A stretch of 64,000 nt of DNA, taken from positions 1 through 64,000 of IMG/VR virus record IMGVR_UViG_3300046660_000219; one strand, given 5' to 3'. The notes under the pieces are model-generated. The model was not told the origin of the DNA and searched no databases. It saw nothing but the letters and a program-made list of their open reading frames with translations. Within the stretch, counting starts at the first letter, position 1. Each line of letters starts with the position of its first letter. The translations under genes were made by a program, and so were the position numbers. This document shows positions 18,068-41,467 of this stretch, in pieces.

Positions 18068-18388
18068 ATGCACATTCTACACGCAGCTCCGCTGCAATCC
18101 GAAGCGATCATCAATGCCGCGCTTTGTTTGCGCGATTGCATCATGTCGTTCAGTACAAGTACTGACAGACCGTACGTCGCGGTGATTGTAAACACCGCCG
18201 ATATTGAACGCTTCGTCGATGATCAAGAACTGAAAGCGTTGAGTGGTGAAAGGGTAGTTGGCAATACGTTGCGGCTGACTTTCGCCGACATGAACGTCTA
18301 TCTAGATAAAGAGTATTTCGATCAACCTCTTCCGCCTGGACGTGCGTATATCGTCGCGGAGGATGCATTGGCGTCAGGCTATGCTTGA
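18068..18388 (+). CDS. Small protein resembling an isolated HK97-capsid A-domain segment
   Basis: VAVIVNTADIERF...TFADMNVYLD...LPPGRAYIVA. Confidence 0.45.
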   Translation: MHILHAAPLQSEAIINAALCLRDCIMSFSTSTDRPYVAVIVNTADIERFVDDQELKALSGERVVGNTLRLTFADMNVYLDKEYFDQPLPPGRAYIVAEDALASGYA

Positions 18389-19112
18389 CCCAGCCGAAAT
18401 TGATCTAACACCTGACGGTTCAATCGGTAACAGCGATGTCGTTCTGATAGATCGCTTTGCCGAACTTGCCGCGAGCTATCGCAAGCTTCACGAGGCGTAC
18501 ACTTACCGGATTGGTTCTGGTGATACCTCTTGTGCTGCGCGTGTACGCCAATACCCTATGCGTCAGCTAACCGTGGTCGAGAAGATCGGTGCTTTGCTGG
18601 ACTCAGCCGCGACGCATACCAAGATCGTAACGAAACTATACTACGCCCAAGAGCCAGTTTCCCGCCAAGAGCTTTGTGATATAGCGGGTATAATAGAGGC
18701 TTCATGGAACCCTACCATTGCTCGTATGCGGACGCTGACGAGCGTTAACATCACTTGTGTGAGTCGTTCGACGCACGTGTACGACGCCAAGACCGACACG
18801 GCGCAACGCGTGTCCTACTATGTTCTTGATGAAAGTGTACGGCAGCGGATTGACTTCGCTCTAGCACATAGCGTTGTAGCCTATGGTTCCGACGAAGCTA
18901 TTATTGCGGCGATCTTGGCGATGCTTCGTGTCAACCCTAGCATGTCAATAAATAGTATCGCTGATCGAACTGGCTATCGCGATATGCTGGATATCGTCAA
19001 GATCGTCGCCCGCCGGATGCTGATCAACGATTTGGTCAATCGTCGGGCCGGACTTTATCGCATCACCAGTGCCGGCTTAGCGCTTGTGCGCGCCGAAGGT
19101 AATTCGAATTGA
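18381..19112 (+). CDS. Putative winged-helix DNA-binding protein
   Basis: VSRQELCDIAGI and SMSINSIADRTG...LVNRRAGLYRITSAG wHTH-like segments. Confidence 0.55.
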   Translation: MLDPAEIDLTPDGSIGNSDVVLIDRFAELAASYRKLHEAYTYRIGSGDTSCAARVRQYPMRQLTVVEKIGALLDSAATHTKIVTKLYYAQEPVSRQELCDIAGIIEASWNPTIARMRTLTSVNITCVSRSTHVYDAKTDTAQRVSYYVLDESVRQRIDFALAHSVVAYGSDEAIIAAILAMLRVNPSMSINSIADRTGYRDMLDIVKIVARRMLINDLVNRRAGLYRITSAGLALVRAEGNSN

Positions 19113-19129
19113 AACCTAGGGAGGGCCTT

Positions 19130-19474
19130 ATGCAACACGACATCATCGCTATCATTCCGAAAGACGGGTTCACCGGTACGTACGTCGAGCCCGGCTCAAA
19201 AGCTGTTACCTTTAAAGAGGTAGATGAACACATCTGTAGGTTCCCTGTTGGCAGGATGAACCTGTTAAATCCGGAAGAGTCGCTTTGTTGTGGTGCTGGC
19301 GTCGTCAATCCGAAGGCCAAGCGCGGTCACGCTGCGTCCTATTGCTGCGAACATCTACCGCTGGTCGCCGTGAAGAACAAAGAGCCCAAAAAGAGCCGCC
19401 ACGGCACGCGCCAGCACTACCGCGAACAAGCGCCAGTTCTACAGTCCCGGTTCGAGGATTTCCTTGAAGGTTAA
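19130..19474 (+). CDS. GcrA C-terminal-domain-like protein
   Basis: EVDEHICRFPVG...CCG...SYCCEH matches the GcrA CxWPIGDP..FCG..PYCxxH pattern; no N-terminal HTH. Confidence 0.65.
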   Translation: MQHDIIAIIPKDGFTGTYVEPGSKAVTFKEVDEHICRFPVGRMNLLNPEESLCCGAGVVNPKAKRGHAASYCCEHLPLVAVKNKEPKKSRHGTRQHYREQAPVLQSRFEDFLEG

Positions 19475-19509
19475 AGGTACAAAATCACGTGGTCATTCAG
19501 CTAATAAGC

Positions 19510-19538
19510 TTGCGCCCGTGATACGGGATCGCTAGTTT
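19510..19538 (+). promoter_or_regulatory. sigma70-like promoter TTGCGC-N17-TAGTTT
   Basis: 17-bp spacer; same -35 as the 4379-4384 element. Confidence 0.45.
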
Positions 19539-19607
19539 AATCCAGTGAACCACAGAGGGCGGACTAGCTCTCGATTTTGACAATGAACCCACGAAAGGGA
19601 CTACCAC

Positions 19608-20477
19608 ATGAGCAAGGGTAACACCGCTCGCAAGTCGGCTGATGTCATCGACATCAAGACGCATCCGAAGGCCGCCAAGAACACCAAGGCCACCGCTCCG
19701 GCGAAGGCTGAGAAGACCACCAAGCAAGCTAAGCCGGAAAAGGCTAAGGCCGTTGCCGCTACCAAGCCCAGCACGAAGACCCCGGCCGTTGCGCCGAAGG
19801 CTCCCAAGGCTGCTGCCAAGCCCACTAAGGCTGTGGTTCGTACCGCGACGATCGTTGGCAAGGCTACCGACGCCAAGGCCCCGCGTGCGGCTAAGGGTCA
19901 CTTCCTGTTTGCGTTTGGTAAGAGTATCGCGCAACAAGCGCTGATCACCCGCGAAGTTCCGGCCGGTCTGCTGGTTTCGAATAAGGTTCCGGCTGTCGCC
20001 AAGCAACTGCTAACGGAGGGCGGTATCCTTTCGAAGGCTGTCGCTAAAGAAGCTGGCCTGGACTTCGCCGCCGTGGTCGCCAAGGTTTCGGAAAGCCGCA
20101 AGGCTCACGTGATCGCCAAGGCCACGTCGCTGTCGGTTACGCCGTATGCCGACAAGGCTAATCTGATCCTCCCGGTTACCGCTGCGGCCTTGGCTAAGGG
20201 CGTGTCGGCTCCGGGTGCTAAGGCCTCTTCGGCTAAGAACATCCCGGCCGCCGCCGTGAAGGTTCCGGCCAAGGTGTCGATCAAGGAAAAAGCTATCACT
20301 CACGCTAAGAACGTGAAGGCTGAAAAGGGTAAGACTCAAGCTGCTCCTAGCAAGCCGCAAAAGTCTGCTACCAAGGCCACCGCTCCGGCGAAGGCTGAGA
20401 AGACCACCAAGCCGGTGAAGTCCGGTAAGACGAGCGCCAAGGTTGAGGCTTCGGCCAAGCCGAAGCGCACGAAGTAA
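19608..20477 (+). CDS. Second histone H1-like basic protein
   Basis: K/A/P/T-rich tails around a small globular core. Confidence 0.75.
   Translation: MSKGNTARKSADVIDIKTHPKAAKNTKATAPAKAEKTTKQAKPEKAKAVAATKPSTKTPAVAPKAPKAAAKPTKAVVRTATIVGKATDAKAPRAAKGHFLFAFGKSIAQQALITREVPAGLLVSNKVPAVAKQLLTEGGILSKAVAKEAGLDFAAVVAKVSESRKAHVIAKATSLSVTPYADKANLILPVTAAALAKGVSAPGAKASSAKNIPAAAVKVPAKVSIKEKAITHAKNVKAEKGKTQAAPSKPQKSATKATAPAKAEKTTKPVKSGKTSAKVEASAKPKRTK
19683..20412 (+). repeat. 43-bp exact direct repeat (19683-19725 and 20370-20412)
   Basis: ACCAAGGCCACCGCTCCGGCGAAGGCTGAGAAGACCACCAAGC occurs twice. Confidence 0.9.
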
Positions 20478-20499
20478 ACCATTAAGCCGTAAGACGTCT

Positions 20500-20576
20500 A
20501 GCTAGGGGGTTATTCCTTCCCTTAGCTTTTCGCACGCTCGGAAACCCCGGCTCTCGTGATGGAGCCGGGGTTTTTC
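20500..20576 (+). terminator. Tandem intrinsic terminators
   Basis: AGCTAGGGGG..CCCTTAGCTTTT then AAACCCCGGCTC..GAGCCGGGGTTTTT. Confidence 0.8.
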
Positions 20577-20602
20577 TGTGTCTATGGGTCGGGAAATGGA
20601 CC

Positions 20603-21724
20603 ATGCGTAATACCTTTAAAGAGCGCTCTCATACACGTGACGATCGCCACACGGCGCGGCGCAAAGCACGCCAAGACAATCAAGCACGCATCATCGTTGT
20701 TGGCGATCTGCATCTTGATTGGAACCCGCGCTTTTTGCAGCAAGGCGAGCACGACAAGTACACCTTGGACGTTATGCGTCACGCTGTAGCGCGGGCCGTA
20801 TTTCATGACGCTCACGCGATAGTGTTTACTGGGGATGTCTTCGACACGCCACAACCCTCACAAGATGCGCGCGCCGTCTTATCTACCTTTCTTAACGAGG
20901 TAGCACAGAACCACCCCGAACTAACCCTGTGGTTTTACACGGGCAATCACGATACTGAGTCAGCGACAGTCTACAGCCTGCGTTGGTTGAAGCCGCTCTG
21001 CGGAAAAGGTAGAGTGTTGCACAACGTGCGTGTCACAAACCGGCCGCAACGGATCAAAATCAACGGCGCTAACGTCCTGATCTTGCCGTGGTTTGAAGCC
21101 AACGAACAGAACAACGAAAATGTAAAGAAACTGCTTATCGGCGGGCGGCAACTAGTGTTCGCTCACAACGAGGTGCGCGGTGCTCTAATGGATAATGGTT
21201 GGGTTGCCGATGGCCTCGACCTGTCCACTACGCAACACGCCTGGGTCATCGGACACTTGCACACTGCACAAGACCTCCACCAAGGCATGGTTACCTACGT
21301 TGGTACGCCCACCGCCCGTCACATGAACCATAAGACGCGGCGGATGCTGCTAGTGACTTTGACTCATGACGATGGTACAATGACGGCCGTCGAAAAGCAG
21401 GATATTCCTGTACCGCAGCCTTACGAATTAGTGGAAGGCTTACCTCCGAAAAGGTATGAGCCAAACACTTACTATAAGGTTCACCTTGAGCTAGGCGAAC
21501 CCGTTCCAAACAACCCGCAAGTGGTTGCTACCAAGCGGATCGGCGAGACGTCCACCAAGGACAAGAAGAAAGCTCACATAAAGGTACCGGCAACGCTCCT
21601 GCCCAATCCCACCGATTGGTTGGTTTCGCGTTTGGCTCCGGAAAAACAGGAGCGCGGCCGCGCACTGTTGATGCGGGCTATCTCCGAAAGTAAACAGCAG
21701 TCGTTACACGATCAAGACGCATAA
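20603..21724 (+). CDS. Mre11/SbcD (gp47-like) metallophosphoesterase nuclease
   Basis: GDLH, GDVFD, GNHD, AH, GHLH motifs. Confidence 0.85.
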   Translation: MRNTFKERSHTRDDRHTARRKARQDNQARIIVVGDLHLDWNPRFLQQGEHDKYTLDVMRHAVARAVFHDAHAIVFTGDVFDTPQPSQDARAVLSTFLNEVAQNHPELTLWFYTGNHDTESATVYSLRWLKPLCGKGRVLHNVRVTNRPQRIKINGANVLILPWFEANEQNNENVKKLLIGGRQLVFAHNEVRGALMDNGWVADGLDLSTTQHAWVIGHLHTAQDLHQGMVTYVGTPTARHMNHKTRRMLLVTLTHDDGTMTAVEKQDIPVPQPYELVEGLPPKRYEPNTYYKVHLELGEPVPNNPQVVATKRIGETSTKDKKKAHIKVPATLLPNPTDWLVSRLAPEKQERGRALLMRAISESKQQSLHDQDA

Positions 21725-21734
21725 AGGTAGAAGC

Positions 21735-22709
21735 ATGGCGCGCTACAATGGCGATGAGCGCATCACCAAGGAAGGCTCGGCGCAAGTCGAGTTTATCCTT
21801 TCGGAGCTGCGCGACAACGACATTCGGAACGAAGTAAAAGGCGAGCACGTTTGGGTGTCGTGCCCATTCCACGGTAATGGTACGGAAACAACCGCGTCAC
21901 GTCGCATCAATCTCAGTGATCCGCGCTATCCAACTGGCGAGTCTTTCTGTTTCGCGTGCTCGGAAGGCAAGGTCAAATCGTGGAATGCTCTTGCCGCCGC
22001 GCGAGGCCTCGCGCCTATGGACAACGGCGGCGGGGAGCGCAACGAAAACTGGCTCCGCATCCCTAGTGAAGCCGAGTTTTACGGTACGCGTTCGGCCGGA
22101 GAGGTTCTGCGCCTCTACAAGCGTCCCAAAGGCTCCTGGCGCAACATCGGGGCGCGTATGATGGAGCGTATGGAGACCCGTCTTATCCAGTCCAAGGACG
22201 GGACACGGGTTTATTTCCCAGTAAAGGTAGGTGGCATTGTAGTAGGCCACTGCGATGCCTGCCCAACTGGGGAGAGCAAGGACAAGTACCTGCTATCAGG
22301 ACCGTGGTCCAACAGCGTCATGTACCCTTACGATTACGTGTCGTTGATGTTGCGCAGCGGTAGTTATCGATACGTGGTCATTGTAGAGGGTTTGAGGGAC
22401 GCTCTTACCCTTATTCAGCGTGGCGTGCCAGCTCTGTGTATGTGGGGTACAGGTGCGTGGACGCGAGAGAAAACCAAAGCTATACGCGCTCTTGGTGCTA
22501 TGGTTGTCATCGCCACGGATGACGACGCGGCCGGGGACGGTGCACGTCGCAAGCTACGGGAAGTATTGACGGATCTTGATCCGGTTGATTTAGAGTTCCA
22601 CAACGGCGGCGACCCTGGTAAACTCAAGCGACACGAAGTGGACAAGATCAAGACTATGCTTGAGCGCACAGCGCGTACGCGTGGGTTCGTTAACCGTAGA
22701 GCCGCCTAA
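21735..22709 (+). CDS. DnaG-type DNA primase
   Basis: CPFH...CFAC Zn finger; TOPRIM VEGLRD and DDDAAG. Confidence 0.85.
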   Translation: MARYNGDERITKEGSAQVEFILSELRDNDIRNEVKGEHVWVSCPFHGNGTETTASRRINLSDPRYPTGESFCFACSEGKVKSWNALAAARGLAPMDNGGGERNENWLRIPSEAEFYGTRSAGEVLRLYKRPKGSWRNIGARMMERMETRLIQSKDGTRVYFPVKVGGIVVGHCDACPTGESKDKYLLSGPWSNSVMYPYDYVSLMLRSGSYRYVVIVEGLRDALTLIQRGVPALCMWGTGAWTREKTKAIRALGAMVVIATDDDAAGDGARRKLREVLTDLDPVDLEFHNGGDPGKLKRHEVDKIKTMLERTARTRGFVNRRAA

Positions 22710-22805
22710 TTTAGTTAGGAAGCGTTGCTTTATAAACAGTAACGTAATTGTTCTAGCTATGTGAACCGCAGACGTTGGTTCGCCCGTCTTCAGGAGTATC
22801 TATCA

Positions 22806-25800
22806 ATGGCCGACGTCGTCACAACTAAGAACTATAATTTGTCCGCTAAGTTCGACGAATTCAATGCTAAATACTTTGACGGTCGCTTGGACAAGATCCG
22901 CGTTGAGTGGGCCGATCTACCCGGTGCGCACGCGCTGTTCCAAGCTTACACTTACGGTAAGACGGGTGGCTATGTCGCCAGCAAAGCCAAGATCCTGATG
23001 GATAACCGTTATGAGCGGACGGAGCGTCTGCTTGACGGTAATCTTATTCACGAAATGGTACACCAATGGGTGGCTCAGGTATTGCGCAATCCGCAAGCAG
23101 AAAACGGTGGCCACAACGATCAATTCTACGCCAAGTGCGAAGAGATTCAGAAGCGCGCCGGGTTCAACATTCCGATCAACGAAGAGGATGCTAGCGACAC
23201 TCTAGGCGCGTCGGAAATCGAGCCCGTGTCTATGGTTCTTCTAGACTCGATCGGCGGTAATGCAGATCGGATTTACTTTGCTGTGATCGCCAATCGTGAG
23301 GCCGACGAGCTACAAAGTGATGGTCGGGATGTTGCGGATAGCACTCTTAAGAGTATGCTCCAACGCCTAAAGCGTACGGATGCTTCTGCCGTGATCGCTA
23401 CCATTCGTGATCCCGATATTGCGCTGTGGTGGCTAGAGGCGTCGCAGCGCGTGCGTGTGTATGACGGTCTGCACGAACTACAGACCAATAGCTTCTATTC
23501 GAGTTCAGAGCTAAGCGATAAACTGCGCGGATTTATGGCGGGTGGCCCTGGTGCTACTATTATAGCGCAGACTCTGTCCTCTACTCCAAATCAAATAACC
23601 CCTGTTGCTCCTGCGCCGGAAATCGATGCGCCAGCGCCTAGTGTTGGGGAGGCTGCGCCCAAGCGCGATCTGATGACGCCGTTCCCCAACCTACCTAGTG
23701 CTGAACAACCCAATAGCAGCAACGCACAGCGTTTCCTTTACCGTAATGTCTTTGGTCAAGGCTCTGGTGTTGAATATCCTTACGTACTGGCGGGTGTTAC
23801 ATCCGAAGGCTTACCCACCCTTCAGGCCACAGATGATCTTACGGAACTGGCGGAGACTGGTTCCGACTATTTCGTCAACATCACGGTGTTAGCTAAAGGT
23901 AGTGAATTAAAAGCTAATCGCGGTGCAGACTTCGCTCGTGCGTTGTCGCGTATTACTGTTACATCTGTGGCGCAGGGCAAGAGCCACAACTACTCCGGCC
24001 AAGACATCCGTACGTGTACGCAGTTGGCTATGGAAAACGGCTTGTTCGCGCAAGATCGCCTGACATCTATGTTGTCGTGGCTTAACGGTATGAACCCGGC
24101 TGTGTCGATCGACGTCTCCAAGTTGACAGCATCTAATATTATTCCGTGGTTCCGTGAGGCTGTTTATGATGCGACTAGCGGTGACCAAAAATTCACGGCG
24201 TTCGTCGCTTTGGCTTGTGGTCTAGGCTCCGCAGACGGCTCGTTGTATCTTGCGGATCGCGTGCTTATGATGCGGCCGGATTATCGGCCCGGTATGGCCA
24301 TGAACGCTATCCCGTTGCTGTCGTATCTGGTCGAAGTGTTCCCAGAGAAATTCTATACCAATATCGCTACCTCAGATTGGTCTGACGACGATTTTGATCG
24401 TGTGTTTTCCAACAAGGGTTTGCTGAAGAAATACAAGGCGCAAGGCGGGGACGCTGGTGTTGTAGAGGCACCACCTAAACCGGAAAAGGAAACAAGCCCG
24501 GTTGATGCACCGGTACCGGAAACTATCCTTTTGCACACCAATCCCGATGGCGATCCGTACGATCGATATTCTATCGTCGTGCTGGACAAGATTGAGAATG
24601 GTAAAGGCTTCATCAAGCAAGTTCAGGCGCAAGATGCAGCGGAATTAGAGCAATACCGCGAAGCAATGATTTTCGATCGTAACGATCCTAAATACCAAGT
24701 GCGATCGTTCGACATCAGTGTCTTACTACTGGAATTGGACGCCGTTCTCCGACGCTTCGACGTACGTATCACGAAAGAGATGTTGCTTACCTTTGTTGAT
24801 AGTGCGCTGGATCGTGACGATTTCGAGTTAGTCGATAGCACGCGTGTCAAGACGCTGGAACAATGGTTCTACCAATGGTTCGGCGAAACCTTCAAGTTCG
24901 ACACAGCCCTTCCTTACACCAAGGCTCTGTTGCAGCTCGCGGGCGCTATCACCAACGCCAAGCGTGATGACCCGGAGTTCAATCGCTACGTCTTGAAAGA
25001 GATGCGCATTGGCGACGGTAAGGACTCTCGCGTACACAACGCTGGACTCATGGCCCAGTTGATGTGGAATGGTAGATTCGGCTCCTCGACTGACTCGCTT
25101 GGTCTGTGGTTGTTGCGTTTGCTGCCTCCCGTTAGTACGGAGCTGATGGACGCCGGCCTCATCAACTATGAGGCTATTAGCTACACTTTCTCGCAGACGT
25201 CTGTTGCTACGTTGCGGGAACGTTGGTTGGAACTGCAAAAGCCTCCGACGCCATCGGTAATTGAGTACACGCAAGACGACGTCACGGAAAAGGGCTACAA
25301 GCCTACGCCGCGCATCTTTGACGAACGTCCGGATGCTGAAGACCTTCGTAAGGTGCAAGCGGATTACAGTATCAGTAAGGACGATTACACAGTGTTTTTG
25401 ATGCACGGTGGTCGTTGGCAAGTGTTCCTCAATCCTGGCGTTACTAGCCCTGTCCTTGAACCGGAGTCTACGGTGCGAGCACCCAAAGTCACTGCGCCCA
25501 CGGGTGCGCGATCTAATCTACAAATGGTACCGGATCCGGAAACCAAACGCCTCGTGCTTCGGGTGGAACCGGGCGACGAGCCGGAAGGTAAAAACCGTAT
25601 GGGTCAGGTTGGTAAACGTGAGGCTCGTCCGATCGCGGCGCTTCTTAACGTGGTTATGGCTAATGACCTCGACGCCGTCCTAGATTTGATCAAGGATGGG
25701 CGACGGAAAGAAGCGGCGCAGAAGGCGGCTCATATATCCGCACGCATGTTGCCGTACTTCAAAAGAACGGTAGAAGAGAAGCAACCGTTCGCGGGACTTC

Positions 25801-25967
25801 AACCGTGGATCGACGCCAACTTCGGCGAGGGTCTGCAAGGCCAGAAAGCGGCCATGTACGCCCTAGAGGGTCAACGGGCTAAGTTGACCACCAAACAGCG
25901 CCAGTACTTGACCCAAGAGAAGAACAAGCGAGAGATCTTCGGCCTGCTGGGCATCAAGTGGAAATAG
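22806..25967 (+). CDS. Large protein with N-terminal SprT-like metalloprotease domain
   Basis: FDEFNAKYFDGRL...HEMVH...GHNDQF; CAGGAG RBS before 22806. Confidence 0.8.
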   Translation: MADVVTTKNYNLSAKFDEFNAKYFDGRLDKIRVEWADLPGAHALFQAYTYGKTGGYVASKAKILMDNRYERTERLLDGNLIHEMVHQWVAQVLRNPQAENGGHNDQFYAKCEEIQKRAGFNIPINEEDASDTLGASEIEPVSMVLLDSIGGNADRIYFAVIANREADELQSDGRDVADSTLKSMLQRLKRTDASAVIATIRDPDIALWWLEASQRVRVYDGLHELQTNSFYSSSELSDKLRGFMAGGPGATIIAQTLSSTPNQITPVAPAPEIDAPAPSVGEAAPKRDLMTPFPNLPSAEQPNSSNAQRFLYRNVFGQGSGVEYPYVLAGVTSEGLPTLQATDDLTELAETGSDYFVNITVLAKGSELKANRGADFARALSRITVTSVAQGKSHNYSGQDIRTCTQLAMENGLFAQDRLTSMLSWLNGMNPAVSIDVSKLTASNIIPWFREAVYDATSGDQKFTAFVALACGLGSADGSLYLADRVLMMRPDYRPGMAMNAIPLLSYLVEVFPEKFYTNIATSDWSDDDFDRVFSNKGLLKKYKAQGGDAGVVEAPPKPEKETSPVDAPVPETILLHTNPDGDPYDRYSIVVLDKIENGKGFIKQVQAQDAAELEQYREAMIFDRNDPKYQVRSFDISVLLLELDAVLRRFDVRITKEMLLTFVDSALDRDDFELVDSTRVKTLEQWFYQWFGETFKFDTALPYTKALLQLAGAITNAKRDDPEFNRYVLKEMRIGDGKDSRVHNAGLMAQLMWNGRFGSSTDSLGLWLLRLLPPVSTELMDAGLINYEAISYTFSQTSVATLRERWLELQKPPTPSVIEYTQDDVTEKGYKPTPRIFDERPDAEDLRKVQADYSISKDDYTVFLMHGGRWQVFLNPGVTSPVLEPESTVRAPKVTAPTGARSNLQMVPDPETKRLVLRVEPGDEPEGKNRMGQVGKREARPIAALLNVVMANDLDAVLDLIKDGRRKEAAQKAAHISARMLPYFKRTVEEKQPFAGLQPWIDANFGEGLQGQKAAMYALEGQRAKLTTKQRQYLTQEKNKREIFGLLGIKWK

Positions 25968-25986
25968 ACAACACAGGGGGCGTAAC

Positions 25987-26205
25987 GTGTATGACGGAGA
26001 AACTGTAACCAGTACCCAAGAGCGTTGCGTAAGATCCTACGAGAAGACGGGCTTTCTCCGGTTGGTCGCGGCGGACTTAGAGCTGCCGTGGCAACTGGTA
26101 TATGTCCACCTTCGTGAGGCTGGTGTTAATGGTATTGCGTTCGACAACGACTTCACCCGTTGCGCCGCGCAGACCTATCGCACCGATCCACCGGACGATG
26201 ACTAA
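25987..26205 (+). CDS. Small HTH-like protein
   Basis: LRLVAADLELPWQLVYVHLREAGV. Confidence 0.5.
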   Translation: MYDGETVTSTQERCVRSYEKTGFLRLVAADLELPWQLVYVHLREAGVNGIAFDNDFTRCAAQTYRTDPPDDD

Positions 26206-26244
26206 AAGAAAGGGGATGGCACTGTAAACGCCATCCCCTTTCTT
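26206..26244. terminator. Bidirectional-type terminator hairpin
   Basis: AAGAAAGGGGATGGC / GCCATCCCCTTTCTT 15-bp stem. Confidence 0.8.
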
Positions 26245-26308
26245 CCGTTTGACGTGGTACAGTATTGTTAGTTTAGCTGAGACAATAACTCTTAGCTTAG
26301 GTGCTAAC

Positions 26309-26581
26309 ATGCAAGTCATCGCTACCATTCCCGAATTTTCTATCGCTGCTTTGGCTACCGCTTTAGACGAAGTGCCGCGCAGCGCTCACGCCTATATCCA
26401 AATGAACATGGCCGCTGAAACCTATGCTCGTATGGAACGTGATCCAAAATTCACTGACGTGTTCGATCCTATCTGCGCTGTTTCCGAAATCAATAAAGGT
26501 AACATGGGCTACCTATACGGTATGCTCGTGGTGCGTGTCGAGGGTCAAAATGTTGAGGCCCAGTTAATCACAAAACAATAG
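26309..26581 (+). CDS. Small protein resembling an isolated HK97-capsid A-domain segment
   Basis: MNMAAETYARMERDPKFTDVFDP...EINKGNMGYLYGMLVV. Confidence 0.55.
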   Translation: MQVIATIPEFSIAALATALDEVPRSAHAYIQMNMAAETYARMERDPKFTDVFDPICAVSEINKGNMGYLYGMLVVRVEGQNVEAQLITKQ

Positions 26582-26603
26582 TACTAAACCTGGGGAGGCC
26601 ACT

Positions 26604-27020
26604 GTGTTTGCTTTTTTCAAAGCGCGCCGATTAGCAACGCTTAAGTACTTCACCTTGCAGGATTACGAGAACGCATTTTACGAAGCCATGTTGCATATGG
26701 ATGGTACACAGCTAACGCCCTTCAACATGTACCTCGTGACCAACGACGACGGCCTTCTTACCCTCTCTAATCCGAGTATCTTCGGGTGGCTAAGCGCGAC
26801 TAGTCTAGGCGATGTAATGGCCGGCGAAGAAGGCAGCTTCTGCGGTTACCCCATTCGTTATGGTACCATTATGGATGGCGAGGGCGCTATCATGTTACGA
26901 TCTACCTTTTCACTATGGTGGCGTGGCATAGTGCAGGACTGGAAAGACGGTGTGTTCCCATTGTCAAGGTTGTTCCAGCGCCGCTATACAGCGCAGCTTG
27001 CGGAACCGCCCGCGAACTGA
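26604..27020 (+). CDS. Small protein resembling an isolated HK97-capsid A-domain segment
   Basis: MYLVTNDDGLLTLSNPSIF...DVMAGEEGSFCGYPIR; GGAGG RBS. Confidence 0.45.
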   Translation: MFAFFKARRLATLKYFTLQDYENAFYEAMLHMDGTQLTPFNMYLVTNDDGLLTLSNPSIFGWLSATSLGDVMAGEEGSFCGYPIRYGTIMDGEGAIMLRSTFSLWWRGIVQDWKDGVFPLSRLFQRRYTAQLAEPPAN

Positions 27021-28507: not shown

Positions 28508-29530
28508 ATGAAGGACTCTCGTTCGTTTGAGGCTGTGACGCGTGAATTGCGTAGGCAAGAAGCCGTTGGCGAAAAGGTAATCGCTAGCATCAAGGCTTTC
28601 CGTCCAGCAGGCAAGGCCAAGATCACCTTGGCTAACGCTAGTATCATGCTCGGTAATGCCGAATCCGTGATGCGTGAAGTCTCCACGCTGCGCGACGAGC
28701 TACGCCTCAATGCGTTTGCGGTTGAGGCGCGCTATGTCCAGCGTAACGCGATTGATCTGGATACCCTTTACGACAATCTGTTGGCCGCCGCTAACGATCT
28801 AGTCGAAAAGGCCAGCCCGATAGCGCCACTGGGTGCGTGCACTGACGTTATCGATACCGTTACTGCGGCATTGGTAAACGGTGGTCAAAACTGGGCTGCG
28901 CGTACGTCGGCTTTTTCTGAAAGTCCGACGACATCGTTCATCATCGCTACCTATACACGTCAGCCTTATACGGATGGCGATAACAAGTTGGTGGTGATTG
29001 TGTCGGTCGAGTATCCAGACACCGGTTATGCCCCGACGTCGGCCCGCTACGCGCTCAGCGTCCTTTACGGACCACTTGAGGCCTATGTCTGGGAAGCCAA
29101 CGTTGTGCACCGTAGCTTCAGCGTCAACCTGGGTGCTGCTAGCAGCACTATTGGTACACGTGCCGCTGACATCATCGCTAGCCGCCTGGAACGTGATGAC
29201 GTGACTCTACGATTTAATCGTAGGTTCAAGCAACCACGTCGCGCTAACGAGATTCGTGCCGATGACATCTGCGGTATGAGCATTCTACCGTTAGCTATCA
29301 CCGATATGGACGAGGAGCGTTGTCTTCTTACTGTCGGTGTTGATCTGCCTGGATTGATCAGCCCTACGTCGCTAGTTGCACTAGGTAGCGAGATCAAGCG
29401 GCGCACGATTAACCAGCTTGGTATCCGCGATATCAACGTCACGGATGAAGCTACACTTGTTATCGGCTTTGTCCCAGAGACGGATATGTCGTTGGCGGCC
29501 GAGCGGATCAAGAAGCTAGCGCAACGATAG
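28508..29530 (+). CDS. Hypothetical protein, late cluster
   Basis: 340-aa ORF after CTAATTTA at 28438. Confidence 0.75.
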   Translation: MKDSRSFEAVTRELRRQEAVGEKVIASIKAFRPAGKAKITLANASIMLGNAESVMREVSTLRDELRLNAFAVEARYVQRNAIDLDTLYDNLLAAANDLVEKASPIAPLGACTDVIDTVTAALVNGGQNWAARTSAFSESPTTSFIIATYTRQPYTDGDNKLVVIVSVEYPDTGYAPTSARYALSVLYGPLEAYVWEANVVHRSFSVNLGAASSTIGTRAADIIASRLERDDVTLRFNRRFKQPRRANEIRADDICGMSILPLAITDMDEERCLLTVGVDLPGLISPTSLVALGSEIKRRTINQLGIRDINVTDEATLVIGFVPETDMSLAAERIKKLAQR

Positions 29531-35563: not shown

Positions 35564-38500
35564 ATGTACGTTGACAAGCTTGGCGGTGATGTTTCGCACA
35601 CCGCGCTTTCGCTGGCTATGCCTGAGCATGCTCCGCTTCCCACGCGCGATAGGGAAATCGCCCTTACAAAGGGTAAGAACAAAACTCCGCGTACGGCTAT
35701 TGGTAAGGACATCGCAGCGAAGAACGAAGAGACGGCGCGCGAAGTCCATAACTCCTTGCGTCAGATTGGTCTTACCGTCGCCTATGCTAGCTTAACCGTG
35801 GCTACGTTCCTGCGTGGTGCTGGTTTACGTAGTCTAGATGATCGTGGTCAAGAAGTCGGTACGCTGCGACGTGAAACGGATCACGATCCGCAAAAGGCTA
35901 ACTCCATCGCGGCTGGCGCACTGTCTGCGGAAAGCTTGTTCAAGCACGCGGCATATGATGACGATACTATTACGTTCACGATGGGCAAGTTGAACGGCGC
36001 GGCGTCGATCATTATCGATCCCTATTCGGATAACTTCGAAACGGTAATCAAGCGTGTCCTCCCGGCGTACAACAAGCCGGTTGGTTACGAGAAAGCTGGT
36101 TACAGCTCGGTCAACCTCGATTTCGGTGACAAGACTGACGAAGATTTCGATCTTACCATTGCGTATGACGATCTAGTCAAGGCTATTCAAGGTACTGGTA
36201 TCGAACTGGACACGCCGCTGTTCTGTGGCAAAGCCAAGCTACCGAAAGGTGTGCGAATCGATATCAACCTGCAAGGGTCTATGCGCGCTAGTGTACAAAC
36301 GGTAACGTCATTCCCGTCGCTAGCGTCCCTGACTAATGGTAAGGGTAGCATAACGTCGAATATGTACGCCATCATGCCTGTCGTGGCCACCGTGAAGGTG
36401 ACTGTGCCAAAGGCCTGGGCGATGTGGGCGACGTACGCGGATAATGATTCCGAATTCGTCCCTACTCTGGCTATGTCGCACTTCTCTACTCTTCTGGCAA
36501 CCGCTGTCGGTACCAAAGGTGGTCGTAGCAACGGCATTACGAAGCGTGATCCGTTCGACAAGGAGAACGAAGCGAAGTTTGCGAACAACTTTGCCAAGAT
36601 CAGTGCGCGTATTAGTAACGTCGCCACGGCTAAGCGCCTAAATCAATCCCGTGCGAAGGTGCTGGGTTTTGAGGCTAAAATCCGTACCAATAAAGATGGC
36701 TACGCCATTCTTCCTAACGGCGAGTTGTGGTTCATTCCGCCGACCGACAATGTCGCGGAATTCGTCAAGCTTTCCAAGGAAGCTTCGGACGGCACGATTG
36801 ATGGTTCGCGCTTCGACTACCCGTCGCGTATCCTTTACGTCGATGCGGTCAACGAAGTCCTCGTGCACACTACGGCGTCATCTACCATTCATACGGTGGA
36901 CTTGCGCGGTAGTCGGCCGCTCGATGACATCTCGCAAGCTAAGTACAGCGCGACCTGGGCGTTAAACCCTACGGCGCTCAAGCACCTGTCGCTGTTTAAC
37001 GGTGCGGATCTTCCGGTCCCGGCTGCATTTATAGCTAGCCTTATCCGCAACAACAACAAAAACAACGAAGTACTAGCCAACGTCCCGTATTTCGCTGATC
37101 TCTGGCGACCTATTCCGGAGAACGGTTCACATGCGGGCGCATCTGCCATGCAAGCCGGTGACTGGTCGCAGCTCATCCGTCTAACAGACGGCAAGAATAC
37201 CTATATGATCAGTGACCCGGCAGAGCGTGAGCGTCTGTTGGGTATCTTGGCGCTTAAGCGTAGCAACGCTGATGTTGATCAAGAAACTGTATGGGCTGCG
37301 GAAAATCGTGTCATCGGTGCGATCCACGAAGCCGCCTTGGCCTTCACCACGGAAGCTCAAAAGTTTGCCGCTAGCGGTGGCCTAGAGCTGAACATGCCGG
37401 AAGGCGCACACAGCGTTTCGACCACGAACCAAGTGCGAATTGCGCTGTATGCGTTTACCCATTTGCTGTCGCGTTGGCCGGAATGTGAATCTAAGCGTCA
37501 GCGCAAGTTCTACGCCAACACACCCAAACCTCTTGATCGCATGGCTTTGAAAGACAAGCCTATTGCGATCCCAAACGTCGATATCGATACCGGTCTGTCG
37601 TACCTTTTCCCACACCAAGCGGAAGTGGTCCAGAACATCGATATCGCTGATCCGCCGGAAGCTGCGGTAATTGGTGGTGCGCCTGGTTTTGGTAAGACCA
37701 ACGTCATCATGGCGGACGTGTTGCTCTTGCTACAAAAAGGTAAGATCAAGCGCCCGCTGGTCGTTGTTCCGAACAAGTTGGAAGGCCAATTTATTAGCGA
37801 GATCAACCGCTTCACTCGCGGTCGGGTCAACGCTTACTGCGCCACCTTCCAAAACCTCAAGGACATGCAGTCGCCAGACGGCCTAAACTTCTCCTATGAA
37901 GAGACCGTCAAGTTCCTGCGCGATCTACCGCCGAATACCATTTTGGTTACCAACTACAACACGCTGACCAACAGCTTCTCGCAGTTCCCGCAACTGTATG
38001 ACTCGATGGCGGCGTACGATACGGTAGGCACGACGCAACAGCTCATGTCGTTCCCGTTCGTGGACATGTTCTATGCGGCGGGTGTGGACTACGTGTGCGG
38101 CGACGAGAGCCACAAGGTCAAAAACCTTAAGGCTGGTCGTGGTCAAGCGTTCTTAGCGCTTTGCGCCAAGGTCGATTACATCCGTCTGTCTTCCGGTACT
38201 ACCGTTAACAACGTGGTTTCTGACCTCGTTGGCCAGATGCAGAAGATCAATCCGCTGGCGCTGGGTGCATCGGTTGAGGCTTTCCAGAAAAGGTTCTTGG
38301 GCGGTGACAAGCAAGTCACTCGTGCAAGCCAAGCGGAAGACATCACCGAAGCCATGCGTGAATACGCTATGGTTATCCAAAAGGATAGTCGTAGCTGGGC
38401 GTACATGTTGCCGCCGTTGACGGAAATCTATCACCGCGTCGAGTTGACGACGCTGCAAGCTCGTTACTACGCCATTCTATTTTACAAGATGGCCGCGCTG

Positions 38501-41467
38501 ATCGAACGAGACGCTGCAAAGCGTAAGATCGATCTGCGTGAAGAGGACGATCTTGACAGCGGCGGACGTGGTAGGCGTCGGCGTCGTCCTAGTGACGATG
38601 AAATGGATGATGCTTCGCCGGAACAGTCGAAGCGCGACTCTATCATCGAAGCCATTTCGGCACGCCATTTCGGCGTGATCGATCGCTTCGTCAATTCGCC
38701 TGATACCTTTGTTGACTTCGTTGATGGTTCGTGGACCGCCGATGAAGAAGACGTGCGTCGGGCAAAGTTGAAGATGGATCCGCTTAGCCCAACTGAGCGC
38801 GCTTCTTGGCCGGCTATTGTTCCAAGTGACAACGACCTTGTATCGGTGAAGGCCAAGTGGGCGTATACCCTTATGTACGCCCACTTCAACATGCACGGTG
38901 CTCTTGCCGAAGTGCAGGCTAACCCTGGCTCGGCCAAGTTCCGCGCCGACCCTGAAAACAAGGTCATTACCCTTTCGCCGTACAAGGTTACCGGCACGCA
39001 CCTTTACGACAAGATGCCTGCTGACCTGAAAGCGATGACTGTCCGCTACCAAGCTGGTAACTTCGTGGAGGTTGAGCGCTTCAAACGCGACGACAAGATT
39101 AAGATTGTCGTCGCTGATGAGATCTCGATCACCGAAGGCCATAATCTACAAATGGCCTCGCGTACTATTCGTATGCAGGGCGTCTGGACGCCGGGCTCTG
39201 AAACTCAGGCCCTTGCGCGTACCCGTCGCCCCGATCCGGGTGGTAAGCGTCAACGATTGGGCTACGATCACATCGTGGCTACTCTTCCTGGCGCTAACGC
39301 TGGCGAAACCAAGCCTACCATTGACGATCTGCGTACTGCCCGTTTGTTAGCTAAGAAACTGTCTAACTCGCGTGTCGAGTTCGGTTACGAGCTGTCTTAT
39401 CAACGTGCGGTCGGTCAGGTTGTGTCGGCACTGCCGCCGGTCAAGATGAGCATGAAGAACATCGAGGAGTTCAAGACCGAACAACTTGCTGCTTACTTCG
39501 ATGCACTTACTCGCCTGAACAACTGGATGTACGACAGTTCGAAGGCGATGACCAAGCAAATTGGTAAGGAAATCTTCGAGGCTACAGGCGAACAGGTTAT
39601 CGATGAAAACGGTAATCCTATCGACCTCGGAAAGTTCGTCGCTGCTGCTGTCGTCAAGACCGCTGCTGCGCCGGAACTGCCCGGTTCGCGTCGCTCCTAC
39701 GTTCCGTGGGTTGGTGGTTCTGAACCTATCAACCCACTCGGCTTTGAAATGATACCGGTACGATCGGCCACACCGATTTCGCTGGAGGATGACGAAGACG
39801 ACGGTGACGAAGGCGATGACGATGATCTAGCCTATGAGCGTATTTCCAACAACGTCGAGATTGATATCGGCACTTATGTGATGACCGAATACGGTCCCGG
39901 TATCGTTTCGCGCGTTGGTCGCCGTAAACGTGGTTCTTGGGCTGCTGCGGATGACATGTCGCCCGATGCTTTCCACGACGCGTCGTTTTACTATATCTCG
40001 ATCCCGTCTATTCGTAATGGTAAAGAAGCGCTGAACGTCCGTCTTGCTGCCAACCGCATCTTCGTCCCCGTTGATGATAATGGTAAGAAGATGTTGCGTG
40101 ACGCGATTAAGAACCGCACAAGCACGATGGCTCCTGTGCCTAATCCCATCACGGGTAAGCAGGTAGAGGATGCGCGCGACCGTAAGGCCGGTCGCAAAGC
40201 GGAAGAAGATCGTCGCTCGAAAAATCCGTCTGATGATGGATCGTTCGCCGACTATTCCGCGCCGACCGCTGATGACTTCGACTTCGACGACGAAGACTTT
40301 GATTTCATCGTTGATGACGAAGACGAGGCAGCCGATCCCGTCGATATCCTCGCGGATATGCTTGATGAAAACGGTAACATTGACTTCAGCGATGAGGTTG
40401 ATGACGACGAAGACGAGACAGACGACCAAGCCGACGATGAAGAAGAGTTCTACGGTTTCGCTCTAGCCATCAACGGCCAACTGGCCTTGTTGGTGGACAG
40501 TGAAAGTCAGGAAGACAACGCCCTGGACGGTATTATTTCCGACTATGGCTTCAAACGCTTCCCGAACTTCACCCGTCTGCACATCAAAACCAAAGCGGCT
40601 CTAGACGCTGTGCTTACACGTCTGGCTAAGAAACGCTATGTCATTCCGCCCCAAAACATGGCTGAAATTCAAAGCCTTGCTAAGGGTTTGACGCAGCGTG
40701 GTGCGCTGAAGCAAACGGAACCGTTCAACTTCCGCGAAGTCACGAACTTCATGATGACGGAGCAACGTCGCGTGCCGGCTGGTACTAATGGTACGAAGCC
40801 GTTCCGTGTCTACGCTCTTGTTCAGCACGGGCTGTTCTATCTTGTCGCCTCTACGGACAAACATCCGTTCCGCGTCAAGCAAGCCTTTACTGATGCTGCC
40901 GCTGGTGTTGCTGGTGTCGGCAAAATCAAGGATTTCTACAACCAAGCTGTTATGTTCGTGAAAAACAAACGGCAAGCGCAAACCGTCGCGAATAACCTCA
41001 TTTCTGCTGGCCTGATCAGCAACGAAGAGGAGTTCCTGTCGGATCTAGCGGAATTCCGTGTCGGCGGTCCTGCTGCCGGCCTACTGAGTCCGCCGGAACG
41101 TGAAGAGCCGGCGGTACCTAAAACGGTACCGACGCCAAAGGCTCCCGTGCCTGCGCAAGTGACTAGCGATTACAGAGAAGGGCCTAACAACCCTGACGTG
41201 GAAAATCTCGCTGAGTTCCGTAACTTCCTGCAAGCCAATAAACCGGTCATGGTGCTCGTTAAGGGTACAATGCTGCCTACGGGCGTGCCTTACATGGTCA
41301 AGGGCTACAGTAACGGAGAGTTCGCGCTCTCGAATCGCAAGAACCAAGCGCGCGACGACTACGAGATGTTCCATGTCCCGGGTAAGGCCGACGTCAGGTT
41401 CGACAACACCAAGGGCCTGATGTACGTCGGAAAAACTGTATGGCGTCTGTCCTATACGGCGTCTTAA
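35564..41467 (+). CDS. SNF2-like (SF2) ATPase/helicase, 1967 aa
   Basis: APGFGKT, DESH, SGT, EGHNLQ, QALARTRR. Confidence 0.9.
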   Translation: MYVDKLGGDVSHTALSLAMPEHAPLPTRDREIALTKGKNKTPRTAIGKDIAAKNEETAREVHNSLRQIGLTVAYASLTVATFLRGAGLRSLDDRGQEVGTLRRETDHDPQKANSIAAGALSAESLFKHAAYDDDTITFTMGKLNGAASIIIDPYSDNFETVIKRVLPAYNKPVGYEKAGYSSVNLDFGDKTDEDFDLTIAYDDLVKAIQGTGIELDTPLFCGKAKLPKGVRIDINLQGSMRASVQTVTSFPSLASLTNGKGSITSNMYAIMPVVATVKVTVPKAWAMWATYADNDSEFVPTLAMSHFSTLLATAVGTKGGRSNGITKRDPFDKENEAKFANNFAKISARISNVATAKRLNQSRAKVLGFEAKIRTNKDGYAILPNGELWFIPPTDNVAEFVKLSKEASDGTIDGSRFDYPSRILYVDAVNEVLVHTTASSTIHTVDLRGSRPLDDISQAKYSATWALNPTALKHLSLFNGADLPVPAAFIASLIRNNNKNNEVLANVPYFADLWRPIPENGSHAGASAMQAGDWSQLIRLTDGKNTYMISDPAERERLLGILALKRSNADVDQETVWAAENRVIGAIHEAALAFTTEAQKFAASGGLELNMPEGAHSVSTTNQVRIALYAFTHLLSRWPECESKRQRKFYANTPKPLDRMALKDKPIAIPNVDIDTGLSYLFPHQAEVVQNIDIADPPEAAVIGGAPGFGKTNVIMADVLLLLQKGKIKRPLVVVPNKLEGQFISEINRFTRGRVNAYCATFQNLKDMQSPDGLNFSYEETVKFLRDLPPNTILVTNYNTLTNSFSQFPQLYDSMAAYDTVGTTQQLMSFPFVDMFYAAGVDYVCGDESHKVKNLKAGRGQAFLALCAKVDYIRLSSGTTVNNVVSDLVGQMQKINPLALGASVEAFQKRFLGGDKQVTRASQAEDITEAMREYAMVIQKDSRSWAYMLPPLTEIYHRVELTTLQARYYAILFYKMAALIERDAAKRKIDLREEDDLDSGGRGRRRRRPSDDEMDDASPEQSKRDSIIEAISARHFGVIDRFVNSPDTFVDFVDGSWTADEEDVRRAKLKMDPLSPTERASWPAIVPSDNDLVSVKAKWAYTLMYAHFNMHGALAEVQANPGSAKFRADPENKVITLSPYKVTGTHLYDKMPADLKAMTVRYQAGNFVEVERFKRDDKIKIVVADEISITEGHNLQMASRTIRMQGVWTPGSETQALARTRRPDPGGKRQRLGYDHIVATLPGANAGETKPTIDDLRTARLLAKKLSNSRVEFGYELSYQRAVGQVVSALPPVKMSMKNIEEFKTEQLAAYFDALTRLNNWMYDSSKAMTKQIGKEIFEATGEQVIDENGNPIDLGKFVAAAVVKTAAAPELPGSRRSYVPWVGGSEPINPLGFEMIPVRSATPISLEDDEDDGDEGDDDDLAYERISNNVEIDIGTYVMTEYGPGIVSRVGRRKRGSWAAADDMSPDAFHDASFYYISIPSIRNGKEALNVRLAANRIFVPVDDNGKKMLRDAIKNRTSTMAPVPNPITGKQVEDARDRKAGRKAEEDRRSKNPSDDGSFADYSAPTADDFDFDDEDFDFIVDDEDEAADPVDILADMLDENGNIDFSDEVDDDEDETDDQADDEEEFYGFALAINGQLALLVDSESQEDNALDGIISDYGFKRFPNFTRLHIKTKAALDAVLTRLAKKRYVIPPQNMAEIQSLAKGLTQRGALKQTEPFNFREVTNFMMTEQRRVPAGTNGTKPFRVYALVQHGLFYLVASTDKHPFRVKQAFTDAAAGVAGVGKIKDFYNQAVMFVKNKRQAQTVANNLISAGLISNEEEFLSDLAEFRVGGPAAGLLSPPEREEPAVPKTVPTPKAPVPAQVTSDYREGPNNPDVENLAEFRNFLQANKPVMVLVKGTMLPTGVPYMVKGYSNGEFALSNRKNQARDDYEMFHVPGKADVRFDNTKGLMYVGKTVWRLSYTAS

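What the first reader, a model, noticed from the sequence alone, without database searches (positions are those of the whole stretch)
18068..27020. Three stand-alone mini-proteins resembling the major-capsid A-domain
Seen: 26309 (90 aa), 26604 (138 aa) and 18068 (106 aa) share the order helix, hydrophobic strand, helix, then a G-x-x-G-x-h-x-G-h-x-V-like segment (clearest in 26309: KGNMGYLYGMLVV; weakest in 18068, which ends LPPGRAYIVA). Known: this pattern is characteristic of the A-domain of HK97-fold capsid proteins. They are far too short to be capsids and lie outside the head operon. Inference: capsid-mimic decoys against capsid-sensing immunity, or assembly modulators.
Basis: inference. 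Interest (0 to 1): 0.65.

Follow-up and report, generated by a model that had tools for sequence, protein, structure and literature searches.

The report
Stand-alone capsid A-domain mini-protein
A 206-kb jumbo phage carries, among its DNA-replication genes, a 90-residue protein that is a free-standing copy of the axial (A) domain of its own capsid protein; a second small protein probably has the same fold and a third is unresolved, and such a fragment could act as a capsid mimic.

Summary
The three ORFs exist as described and all look like real genes (best coding frame, Shine-Dalgarno-like sites). They are not equally supported.

- **ORF B (26309-26581, 90 aa): confirmed.** It belongs to a rare family of 9 small-protein clusters (90-164 aa). 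The family profile matches the phage's own major capsid protein (MCP, genome 65652-66731) at residues about 219-293: HMMER E 1.5e-9, hhalign probability 97%, E 5.7e-11. It also matches the MCP of all 9 related jumbo phages tested, and its best hit in the PDB is the phage G capsid protein.
- **ORF A (18068-18388, 106 aa): probable.** It has no sequence similarity to the MCP. Its ESM Atlas model (pTM 0.71) has mostly capsid-protein clusters as structural neighbours (TM 0.55-0.63).
- **ORF C (26604-27020, 138 aa): unresolved.** No homologues were found, the AlphaFold2 model is useless (pLDDT 35), and only weak language-model leads point to HK97-fold families.

In a tree the mini-proteins sit on one side of a single well-supported branch, apart from the MCPs, so they look like an old paralogue, not a recent fragment. 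They always lie among replication or recombination genes and are missing from most relatives. Function is untested. Decoy and assembly-modulator roles both remain inference. A co-fold of B with the MCP gave only weak support.

The parts
26309..26581 (+). ORF B, 90 aa (an alternative TTG start at 26249 would give 110 aa): stand-alone homologue of the MCP A-domain
   Evidence: - Member of a 9-cluster small-protein family.
- The family profile hits the phage's own MCP at E 1.5e-9.
- hhalign against the MCP family gives probability 97.1, E 5.7e-11.
- The coding score is highest in this frame, and AGGTG lies before the ATG at 26309. The 26249-26308 extension scores about 0.
- The gene caller on the identical Logan contig also called the 90-aa form.
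26333..26557 (+). Core of ORF B (residues 9-83) that aligns with MCP residues 219-293. It includes the motif F-x-D-x-FDP-[IV]...I..G..G...GM.V.
   Evidence: - hhalign alignment.
- Block alignment of 9 mini-proteins with 10 MCP segments.
- The same region aligns with residues 144-226 of the solved phage G MCP 6wkk_A.
18068..18388 (+). ORF A, 106 aa: orphan by sequence, probably an A-domain-like fold. Its stop overlaps an ATG at 18381 of the downstream winged-helix gene.
   Evidence: - The ESM Atlas holds the sequence with a model of pTM 0.71.
- Its structural neighbours carry GP7, Gp13-like, SU10_MCP, Phage_capsid and Phage_capsid_2, at TM by query 0.55-0.63 over 77-96 residues.
- No hit to the MCP or mini-protein profiles.
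- Coding score +0.18 to +0.24, with GGGGGAA upstream.
- Sequence of the overlap read.
26604..27020 (+). ORF C, 138 aa: orphan directly downstream of B. An A-domain relationship is not established.
   Evidence: - Only itself found in the word search, no phage tblastn hit, no Pfam or PHROG family.
- Not reported by the MCP or mini-protein HMMs.
- AlphaFold2 single-sequence model has pLDDT 34.8.
- Language-model leads at 0.88 point to SU10_MCP, Phage_cap_P2 and SrpI-like clusters, with low recognition.
- It shares the G..G.h.Gh.[VIL] motif with B alone in the proteome.
- GGGGAGG lies before the GTG start.

Best explanation
**Shown.**
- The window is the first 64 kb of a complete 205.9-kb jumbo myovirus from a rhizosphere metagenome. 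Its MCP belongs to the phage G gp27 / phiRSL1 type of HK97-fold capsid proteins.
- ORF B is a free-standing paralogue of the contiguous A-domain stretch of that MCP (MCP residues about 219-293: helix, strand, helix, beta-hairpin).
- It is too short to hold the rest of an MCP. By the known order of the HK97 fold, the missing parts are the N-arm, E-loop, spine helix and P-domain, which build the capsid lattice.
- It belongs to a rare family that lies on one side of a well-supported branch, apart from all sampled MCPs.
- The family is always encoded among replication or recombination genes, never in the head module.

**Probable.** ORF A has the same fold.

**Open.** ORF C, possibly a diverged tandem copy of B.

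**Inferred mechanism.** The protein presents the capsomer-forming A-domain surface but cannot polymerise. It therefore acts as a competitive binder of whatever recognises that surface. I judge the most likely target to be a host capsid sensor (decoy or inhibitor), probably present before the late MCP burst. The second most likely target is the MCP itself.
For: **Identity of B.**
- BLASTP against the MCP gives E 5e-5.
- The big HMMER search finds 9 small-protein clusters of 90-164 aa.
- The family profile hits the phage's own MCP at E 1.5e-9 and 3.1e-9. The MCP profile hits B at E 1.9e-4 with nothing else below E 1.
- hhalign gives probability 97.1, E 5.7e-11.
- The profile's best PDB hit is the phage G MCP 6wkk_A, E 0.0074, residues 144-226 of 280.
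- The profile hits the MCP of 9 of 9 related jumbo phages.
- P0012 finds an MCP in a 250-kb metagenome contig at 33% identity.

**Old paralogue, not a recent fragment.** Mini-proteins and MCPs are split by one branch with support 97/99.

**Context.**
- Here: SbcD-like nuclease, primase and a SprT-like 1068-aa protein.
- Elsewhere: between a ResIII helicase and DnaB, or after a RecA-domain protein.

**ORF A.** Structural neighbours of its model are MCP families.

**Mechanism (literature and weak modelling only).**
- Avs7, Avs8 and Avs10 bind the penton/hexon-forming face of the A-domain; Dsr1 shares the Avs7-type sensor domain (bioRxiv 10.64898/2026.01.04.697583).
- The co-fold of B with the MCP scored 0.39 against a best control of 0.06. 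That mark was reached by 58 of 80 solved complexes and 2 of 110 mismatched pairs, but at 0.60 or under by only 7 of those 80 and by both mismatches. The runs agree in at least 72% of contacts, and the partner's pLDDT is at least 83.
Against: - No functional data of any kind, and no RNA run holds the sequence. Early expression is inferred from neighbouring genes only.
- No capsid-mimic decoy was found in the literature searches.
- A free A-domain might trigger a sensor rather than block it.
- The host and its defence repertoire are unknown.
- The structural test of B failed: AlphaFold2 pLDDT 53.8, and fold searches on that model returned random matches.
- A and C have no sequence support.
- The co-fold pass is weak. 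It may reflect the model's memory of A-domain contacts in solved capsomers.
- The tree rests on about 85 homologous positions, and B sits on a long branch.
Confidence: 0.4

Rival explanations
1. B (and perhaps A and C) binds the phage's own MCP, or that of a co-infecting relative. It would dock like a neighbouring subunit's A-domain and act as an assembly chaperone, a cap, a timing brake or a poison subunit.
For: - The co-fold of MCP with B gave weak support: ipSAE median 0.39 (runs 0.39, 0.60, 0.38), best control 0.06, partner pLDDT at least 83, at least 72% of contacts shared between runs. The calibration counts are those given.
- B keeps the residues conserved across the MCP A-domain core.
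Against: - The gene is never in the head module.
- A stand-alone gene was found in only 2 of 9 relatives that have the same MCP type, so it is not a core assembly factor.
- The co-fold pass lies in the range where passes are more often wrong than right unless the guess was likely beforehand. It may also come from memory of solved capsomers.
Confidence: 0.25
2. The A-domain fold was exapted for a job unrelated to capsids, for example as an accessory of the replication or recombination machinery. The resemblance to the MCP would then be only historical.
For: - In three unrelated contexts the gene sits next to helicase, RecA-domain, DnaB or primase genes.
- In L023 its start lies 2 nt after the stop of a ResIII helicase gene.
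- The mini-protein branch is old and separate from the MCPs.
Against: - The neighbours are not homologous between phages, so there is no conserved partner gene.
- Gene order in jumbo phages is a weak guide to function.
- The residues retained are the MCP core motif.
Confidence: 0.2
3. Only B is capsid-related. A and C are unrelated orphan small proteins, and the shared 'helix, strand, helix, glycine-rich segment' pattern is a by-eye coincidence for them.
For: - No pairwise similarity among the three.
- No hit of A or C to the MCP, mini-protein or combined profiles. A ranks 6th to 19th of 150 small proteins at about 0 bits, and C is not reported at all.
- No similarity to HK97 gp5.
- The AlphaFold2 model of C is useless.
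Against: - **A:** most of the named structural neighbours of its Atlas model are MCP families, at TM 0.55-0.63. A poor model (B's AlphaFold2 model) returned only random non-capsid rows in the same library.
- **C:** all three named family sets among its language-model neighbours are HK97-fold families (SrpI-like being encapsulins, from my own knowledge), but at 0.88, which is 'lead only'.
- **C:** the motif is shared only with the adjacent B, though it was defined after the fact.
Confidence: 0.3
4. B is a decaying remnant of a partial MCP duplication and has no function.
For: It is short, and it is absent from most relatives.
Against: - Intact family members at 15-52% mutual identity occur in several divergent phages and metagenomes.
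- The mini-proteins are separated from the MCPs by one branch with 97/99 support.
- B has the highest coding score of the local small ORFs.
Confidence: 0.03

Closest known systems
HK97-fold major capsid proteins of the phage G gp27 / phiRSL1 ORF136 type (PDB 6wkk; phrog_2522)
   Same: B and its family share the A-domain core with these MCPs, motif by motif: helix, hydrophobic strand, helix, then F-x-D-x-FDP-[IV]..I..G..G...GM.V.
   Different: - The mini-proteins are 90-164 aa against about 360 aa.
- They align only with MCP 219-293. By the known order of the HK97 fold, the N-arm, E-loop, spine helix and P-domain are missing.
- They are encoded among replication genes, not in the head module.
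- They sit on their own side of a single tree branch.
Full-length MCP paralogues with specialised roles, such as the T4 gp24 vertex protein (from my own knowledge, not tested here)
   Same: A duplicate of the capsid gene kept for a second role.
   Different: Those paralogues keep the whole HK97 fold and are built into the shell. The proteins here are a single domain and cannot form a lattice.
Capsid-sensing defence systems whose sensors bind the A-domain: Avs7, Avs8, Avs10, and Dsr1, which shares the Avs7-type sensor domain (bioRxiv 10.64898/2026.01.04.697583). Also CapRel and Lit, which read short MCP motifs.
   Same: The surface reported to be recognised, the penton/hexon-forming face of the A-domain, is in the domain that B copies.
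   Different: These are host sensors, not phage proteins. No phage-encoded capsid mimic that blocks them turned up in my searches. Binding of B to any of them is untested.
Capsid-assembly redirecting proteins of satellites, such as P4 Sid and SaPI CpmB (from my own knowledge)
   Same: Small proteins that act on MCP assembly by binding MCP.
   Different: As far as I know they are not homologous to the MCP. They belong to satellites, not to the phage itself.

Membership tests
HK97-fold major capsid protein (phage G gp27 / phiRSL1 type) | Significant sequence homology to family members | tested here: met
   Met for B only, and only over the A-domain segment. Not met for A or C.
HK97-fold major capsid protein (phage G gp27 / phiRSL1 type) | Complete architecture: N-arm, E-loop, spine helix and P-domain as well as the A-domain | tested here: not met
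   B is 90 aa and aligns only with MCP residues 219-293 of 359. A is 106 aa and C is 138 aa. None of the three can be a capsid subunit.
HK97-fold major capsid protein (phage G gp27 / phiRSL1 type) | A-domain fold shown by structure comparison | tested here: inconclusive
   - **A:** the neighbours of its Atlas model are MCP families, TM 0.55-0.63.
- **B:** AlphaFold2 pLDDT 53.8 and random fold matches, although ESMFold2 gave the B chain a pLDDT of 84 in the co-fold with the MCP.
- **C:** pLDDT 34.8.
Stand-alone A-domain mini-protein family (9 clusters, P0003 and P0006-P0013) | Profile match over the conserved core, with a length of 90-164 aa | tested here: met
   B (identical to P0003) matches at E 5e-32 in the 1.84-billion-protein search. 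A and C do not match the family profile.
Phage anti-defence decoy or inhibitor of capsid sensors | Binds a capsid-sensing defence protein and suppresses its activation | not testable with these tools
   The host and its defence systems are unknown, and no sensor sequence was available to test. The idea is inference.
Capsid assembly modulator | Binds the MCP | tested here: inconclusive
   The co-fold gave weak support: 0.39 against a best control of 0.06, with the calibration counts given.

The most novel reading that the evidence does not exclude
Jumbo phages encode free-standing copies of the capsid A-domain, one proven and up to three in this genome. Made before the capsid protein, they would occupy the A-domain-binding pocket of host capsid sensors (Avs7/8/10- or Dsr1-like) without triggering them. 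This would be the first capsid-mimic anti-defence proteins.
Probability: 0.2. Interest if true: 0.85.

Novelty: new variant of a known kind. Interest (0 to 1): 0.62.

Why it matters
The HK97 fold is known as a whole-protein building block of capsids and encapsulins. A conserved family made of its A-domain alone, kept outside the head module, would be a new use of that fold.

It also gives a concrete, testable candidate for how phages might deal with the many defence systems now known to sense the capsid A-domain. Alternatively, it may show how phages control or sabotage capsid assembly.

Homologues exist in culturable Erwinia phages of the pEa_SNUABM series, for example QYW05602.1 in pEa_SNUABM_25, so experiments are feasible.

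Tried and rejected
**Searches that found nothing**
- Megablast of the region against phage records: no match.
- Pfam and PHROGs for A, B and C: nothing usable. The MCP itself has no Pfam hit, and PF05065 finds nothing in the genome.
- Word-index protein search: each of A, B and C found only itself.
- tblastn against phages for A and C: nothing.
- IMG/VR scans with A, C, the 210-aa neighbour and the MCP: nothing.
- Metagenome scans: the first found nothing. The second found only an MCP in a 250-kb contig, not a new mini-protein. The full family alignment was too divergent to build search patterns from.
- phmmer of A and C against the PDB: no capsid hits.
- BLASTP of A, B and C against HK97 gp5: nothing. 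This comparison has no power, because B, a proven homologue of an HK97-fold MCP, also fails it.

**Structure attempts that failed**
- AlphaFold2 of B with 9 sequences: pLDDT 53.8.
- VIA-align, BFVD and Atlas searches on that model: only weak, unrelated rows.
- AlphaFold2 of C from a single sequence: pLDDT 34.8.

**Context and comparative checks**
- The Logan contig that carries C is 100% identical to the window, so it gives no comparative signal.
- Neighbours of the mini-protein gene are not homologous between phages.
- The promoter and terminator scan was uninformative.
- 'Relatives' cannot be drawn for a virus record.
- Only the source rhizosphere metagenome holds the DNA and no RNA run does.

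**Idea rejected:** that each mini-protein arose recently from its own phage's MCP. The tree puts all mini-proteins on one side of a branch with 97/99 support.
Full report
**What the window is.** The window is bases 1-64000 of a 205,908-bp IMG/VR virus record with direct terminal repeats, rated complete. Only one sequencing run holds the DNA. It is a rhizosphere metagenome and probably the source.

The genome encodes these recognisable proteins:
- a portal at 42588-44417;
- a tail sheath and a baseplate wedge;
- a 359-aa major head protein at genome 65652-66731, matching phrog_2522 at E 4.9e-58.

That MCP is 32-37% identical to the MCPs of jumbo myoviruses: phiRSL1, RHEph12, vB_PpuM-Peetri, BcepSauron, Motura and the Erwinia pEa_SNUABM phages. 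It matches the solved phage G capsid protein gp27 (6wkk_A) at E 1.1e-13.

**The observation.** The quoted motifs are present.
- Each ORF has its best codon-usage score in its own frame and an SD-like site upstream. For B the ATG at 26309 is the likelier start; the extension back to the TTG at 26249 scores about zero.
- An independent gene call on an identical Logan contig gives the same 90-aa and 138-aa products.
- The neighbours are replication genes, not head genes: an SbcD-like nuclease, a primase and a 1068-aa protein with an SprT-like domain.
- None of the three ORFs has a Pfam or PHROG family.
- They show no pairwise similarity to each other.

**ORF B is a stand-alone copy of the MCP A-domain.**
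- BLASTP of B against the phage's own MCP gives E 5e-5, B 48-75 against MCP 258-285.
- tblastn finds 127-140-aa hypothetical proteins in Erwinia jumbo phages.
- A profile of B plus two such homologues, searched against 1.84 billion representative proteins, returned only nine clusters, all 90-164 aa.
- The nine-member profile hits this genome twice: B itself, and the MCP at 66375-66539 with E 1.5e-9.
- In a filter-free hmmsearch over all 2601 stop-to-stop ORFs, the mini-protein profile finds B and the MCP (E 3.1e-9) and nothing else below E 5. A profile of ten jumbo-phage MCPs finds the MCP and B (E 1.9e-4) and nothing else below E 1.
- Profile-profile comparison gives probability 97.1%, E 5.7e-11, over 75 columns. 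B residues 9-83 align with MCP residues 219-293.
- Against the whole PDB, the mini-protein profile's best hit is the phage G capsid protein, residues 144-226 of 280, at E 0.0074.
- The profile also hits the MCP of every one of nine related jumbo phages, at E 7e-10 to 4.5e-5.
- One family member, P0012, finds an MCP in a 250-kb metagenome contig at 33% identity.

The block alignment shows the shared order: helix, hydrophobic strand, helix, then F-x-D-x-FDP-[IV]..I..G..G...GM.V. In P0012 and P0013 the similarity continues into TDAY.HP.

By the known order of the HK97 fold, the segment after the long spine helix and before the returning P-domain strands is the A-domain. This assignment comes from established knowledge of HK97 gp5. 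It was not verified on coordinates here.

[quoted passage not shown] The mini-proteins therefore did not arise recently from each phage's own MCP. The caveats are that the tree rests on about 85 homologous positions and that B sits on a long branch.

A stand-alone gene was found only here and in the two Erwinia-type genomes. It is absent from seven other relatives that have the same MCP type.

The gene's context differs between phages but is always replication or recombination:
- between a ResIII helicase and a DnaB helicase in L023, starting 2 nt after the helicase stop;
- after an 841-aa RecA-domain protein in L025, L012 and L013.

The neighbours themselves are not homologous between phages.

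**ORF A.** No sequence method links A to the MCP, to the mini-protein family or to HK97 gp5.

The ESM Atlas holds A letter for letter, with a model of pTM 0.71. Of the ten structural-neighbour rows, five carry MCP families (Gp13-like, GP7, SU10_MCP, Phage_capsid, Phage_capsid_2). TM by query across the rows is 0.55-0.63, over 77-96 of 106 residues. The remaining rows are mostly viral proteins without a capsid family name.

As a contrast, the poor AlphaFold2 model of B, searched in the same library, returned only unrelated cellular families at TM 0.41 or lower. I take A as probably A-domain-like, at about 0.75. The aligned part of the MCPs was not reported, so 'A-domain' specifically is inference. 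By eye, A shows the classic order 'hhhN..D' strand-helix and a late 'P.G..hhh' strand.

**ORF C.** C has no homologues and no profile signal. The AlphaFold2 model has pLDDT 34.8. Two leads remain:
- Among its language-model neighbours, the only named sets are SU10_MCP, Phage_cap_P2 and SrpI-like. All are HK97-fold families (for SrpI-like, encapsulins, this is from my own knowledge). The scores are 0.88 with low recognition, which the tool rates as a lead only.

I put C at about even odds.

**Mechanism.** Nothing here measures function.
- A single A-domain lacks the parts that build the capsid lattice, so it cannot be a shell subunit. It could, however, occupy partners of the A-domain surface.
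- A 2026 preprint reports that Avs7, Avs8 and Avs10 bind the penton/hexon-forming face of the MCP A-domain, and that Dsr1 shares the Avs7-type sensor domain. CapRel and Lit read short MCP motifs (bioRxiv 10.64898/2026.01.04.697583).
- I found no report of a phage-encoded capsid mimic.
- A co-fold of the MCP with B gave weak support: ipSAE 0.39, 0.60 and 0.38 against a best control of 0.06, at least 72% of contacts shared between runs, and partner pLDDT at least 83. That mark was reached by 58 of 80 solved complexes and 2 of 110 mismatched pairs, but at 0.60 or under by only 7 of those 80 and by both mismatches. The result may reflect the model's memory of capsomer contacts.
- Placement among replication genes and absence from most relatives argue against a core assembly role. 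They fit an accessory, conflict-related role, but this is inference.

My rough split for the function of B:

| Reading | Weight |
|---|---|
| Decoy or inhibitor of a capsid sensor | about 0.35-0.4 |
| Binder of the MCP (modulator or poison) | 0.25 |
| Exapted to an unrelated function | 0.2 |
| Other explanations | the rest |

**Verdict.** I found no description of a stand-alone A-domain family, so I rate this a new variant of a known kind.

Noticed in passing
window 22761-25967 (+): A 1068-aa protein whose first 140 residues or so are an SprT-like zinc metalloprotease domain (PF10263, E 1.1e-6). The remaining 900 or so residues have no family. It sits between the primase and ORF B.
   Followed up: partly
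window 19608-20477 (+): A 289-aa protein that is very rich in lysine, alanine and proline (AKP-rich repeats, histone H1- or AlgP-like in composition). It has no Pfam or PHROG family.
   Followed up: no
window 57411-58571, 59636-60880, 61508-62689 (+): Three paralogous SGNH/GDSL 'lysophospholipase L1-like esterase' genes in a row (phrog_8480, E 4e-37 to 6e-50), just upstream of the MCP region.
   Followed up: no
window 18342-19112 and 19109-19474 (+): Downstream of ORF A lies a roughly 243-256-aa protein with weak winged-helix (MarR/AsnC-like) matches. Its likely ATG at 18381 overlaps the stop of ORF A by 8 nt. After it comes a 121-aa protein with a weak GcrA-like match (E 0.006).
   Followed up: partly
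window 47576-49429 (+) and 35564-41467 (+): An NAD-dependent DNA ligase gene sits between tail-fibre-like and head-decoration-like genes. Further left lies a 1967-aa SNF2/ResIII helicase.
   Followed up: no
L025:4269-5291 and the corresponding 340-354-aa genes in L010-L013: In the Erwinia-type phages the mini-protein gene is followed, two genes downstream, by a protein with an AcrVA2-like Pfam hit (PF26125). The 340-aa protein at window 28508-29530 is not detectably related to it.
   Followed up: partly
L012:3197-5746, L013:3189-5714: The 841-849-aa RecA-domain protein upstream of the Erwinia mini-protein gene is much longer than RecA or UvsX. It may carry a large insertion, and its middle part differs between the two phages.
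   Followed up: no
ESM Atlas rows for ORF A: One structural neighbour of ORF A is a cluster of 113-aa viral proteins that carry the GP7 capsid Pfam family (64 members). These are either gene fragments or further stand-alone capsid-domain proteins. The top feature hits for ORF A are unnamed clusters of 96-113-aa phage or Pseudomonadota proteins sharing 193-197 of 256 features, so A may belong to a wider unnamed family.
   Followed up: no
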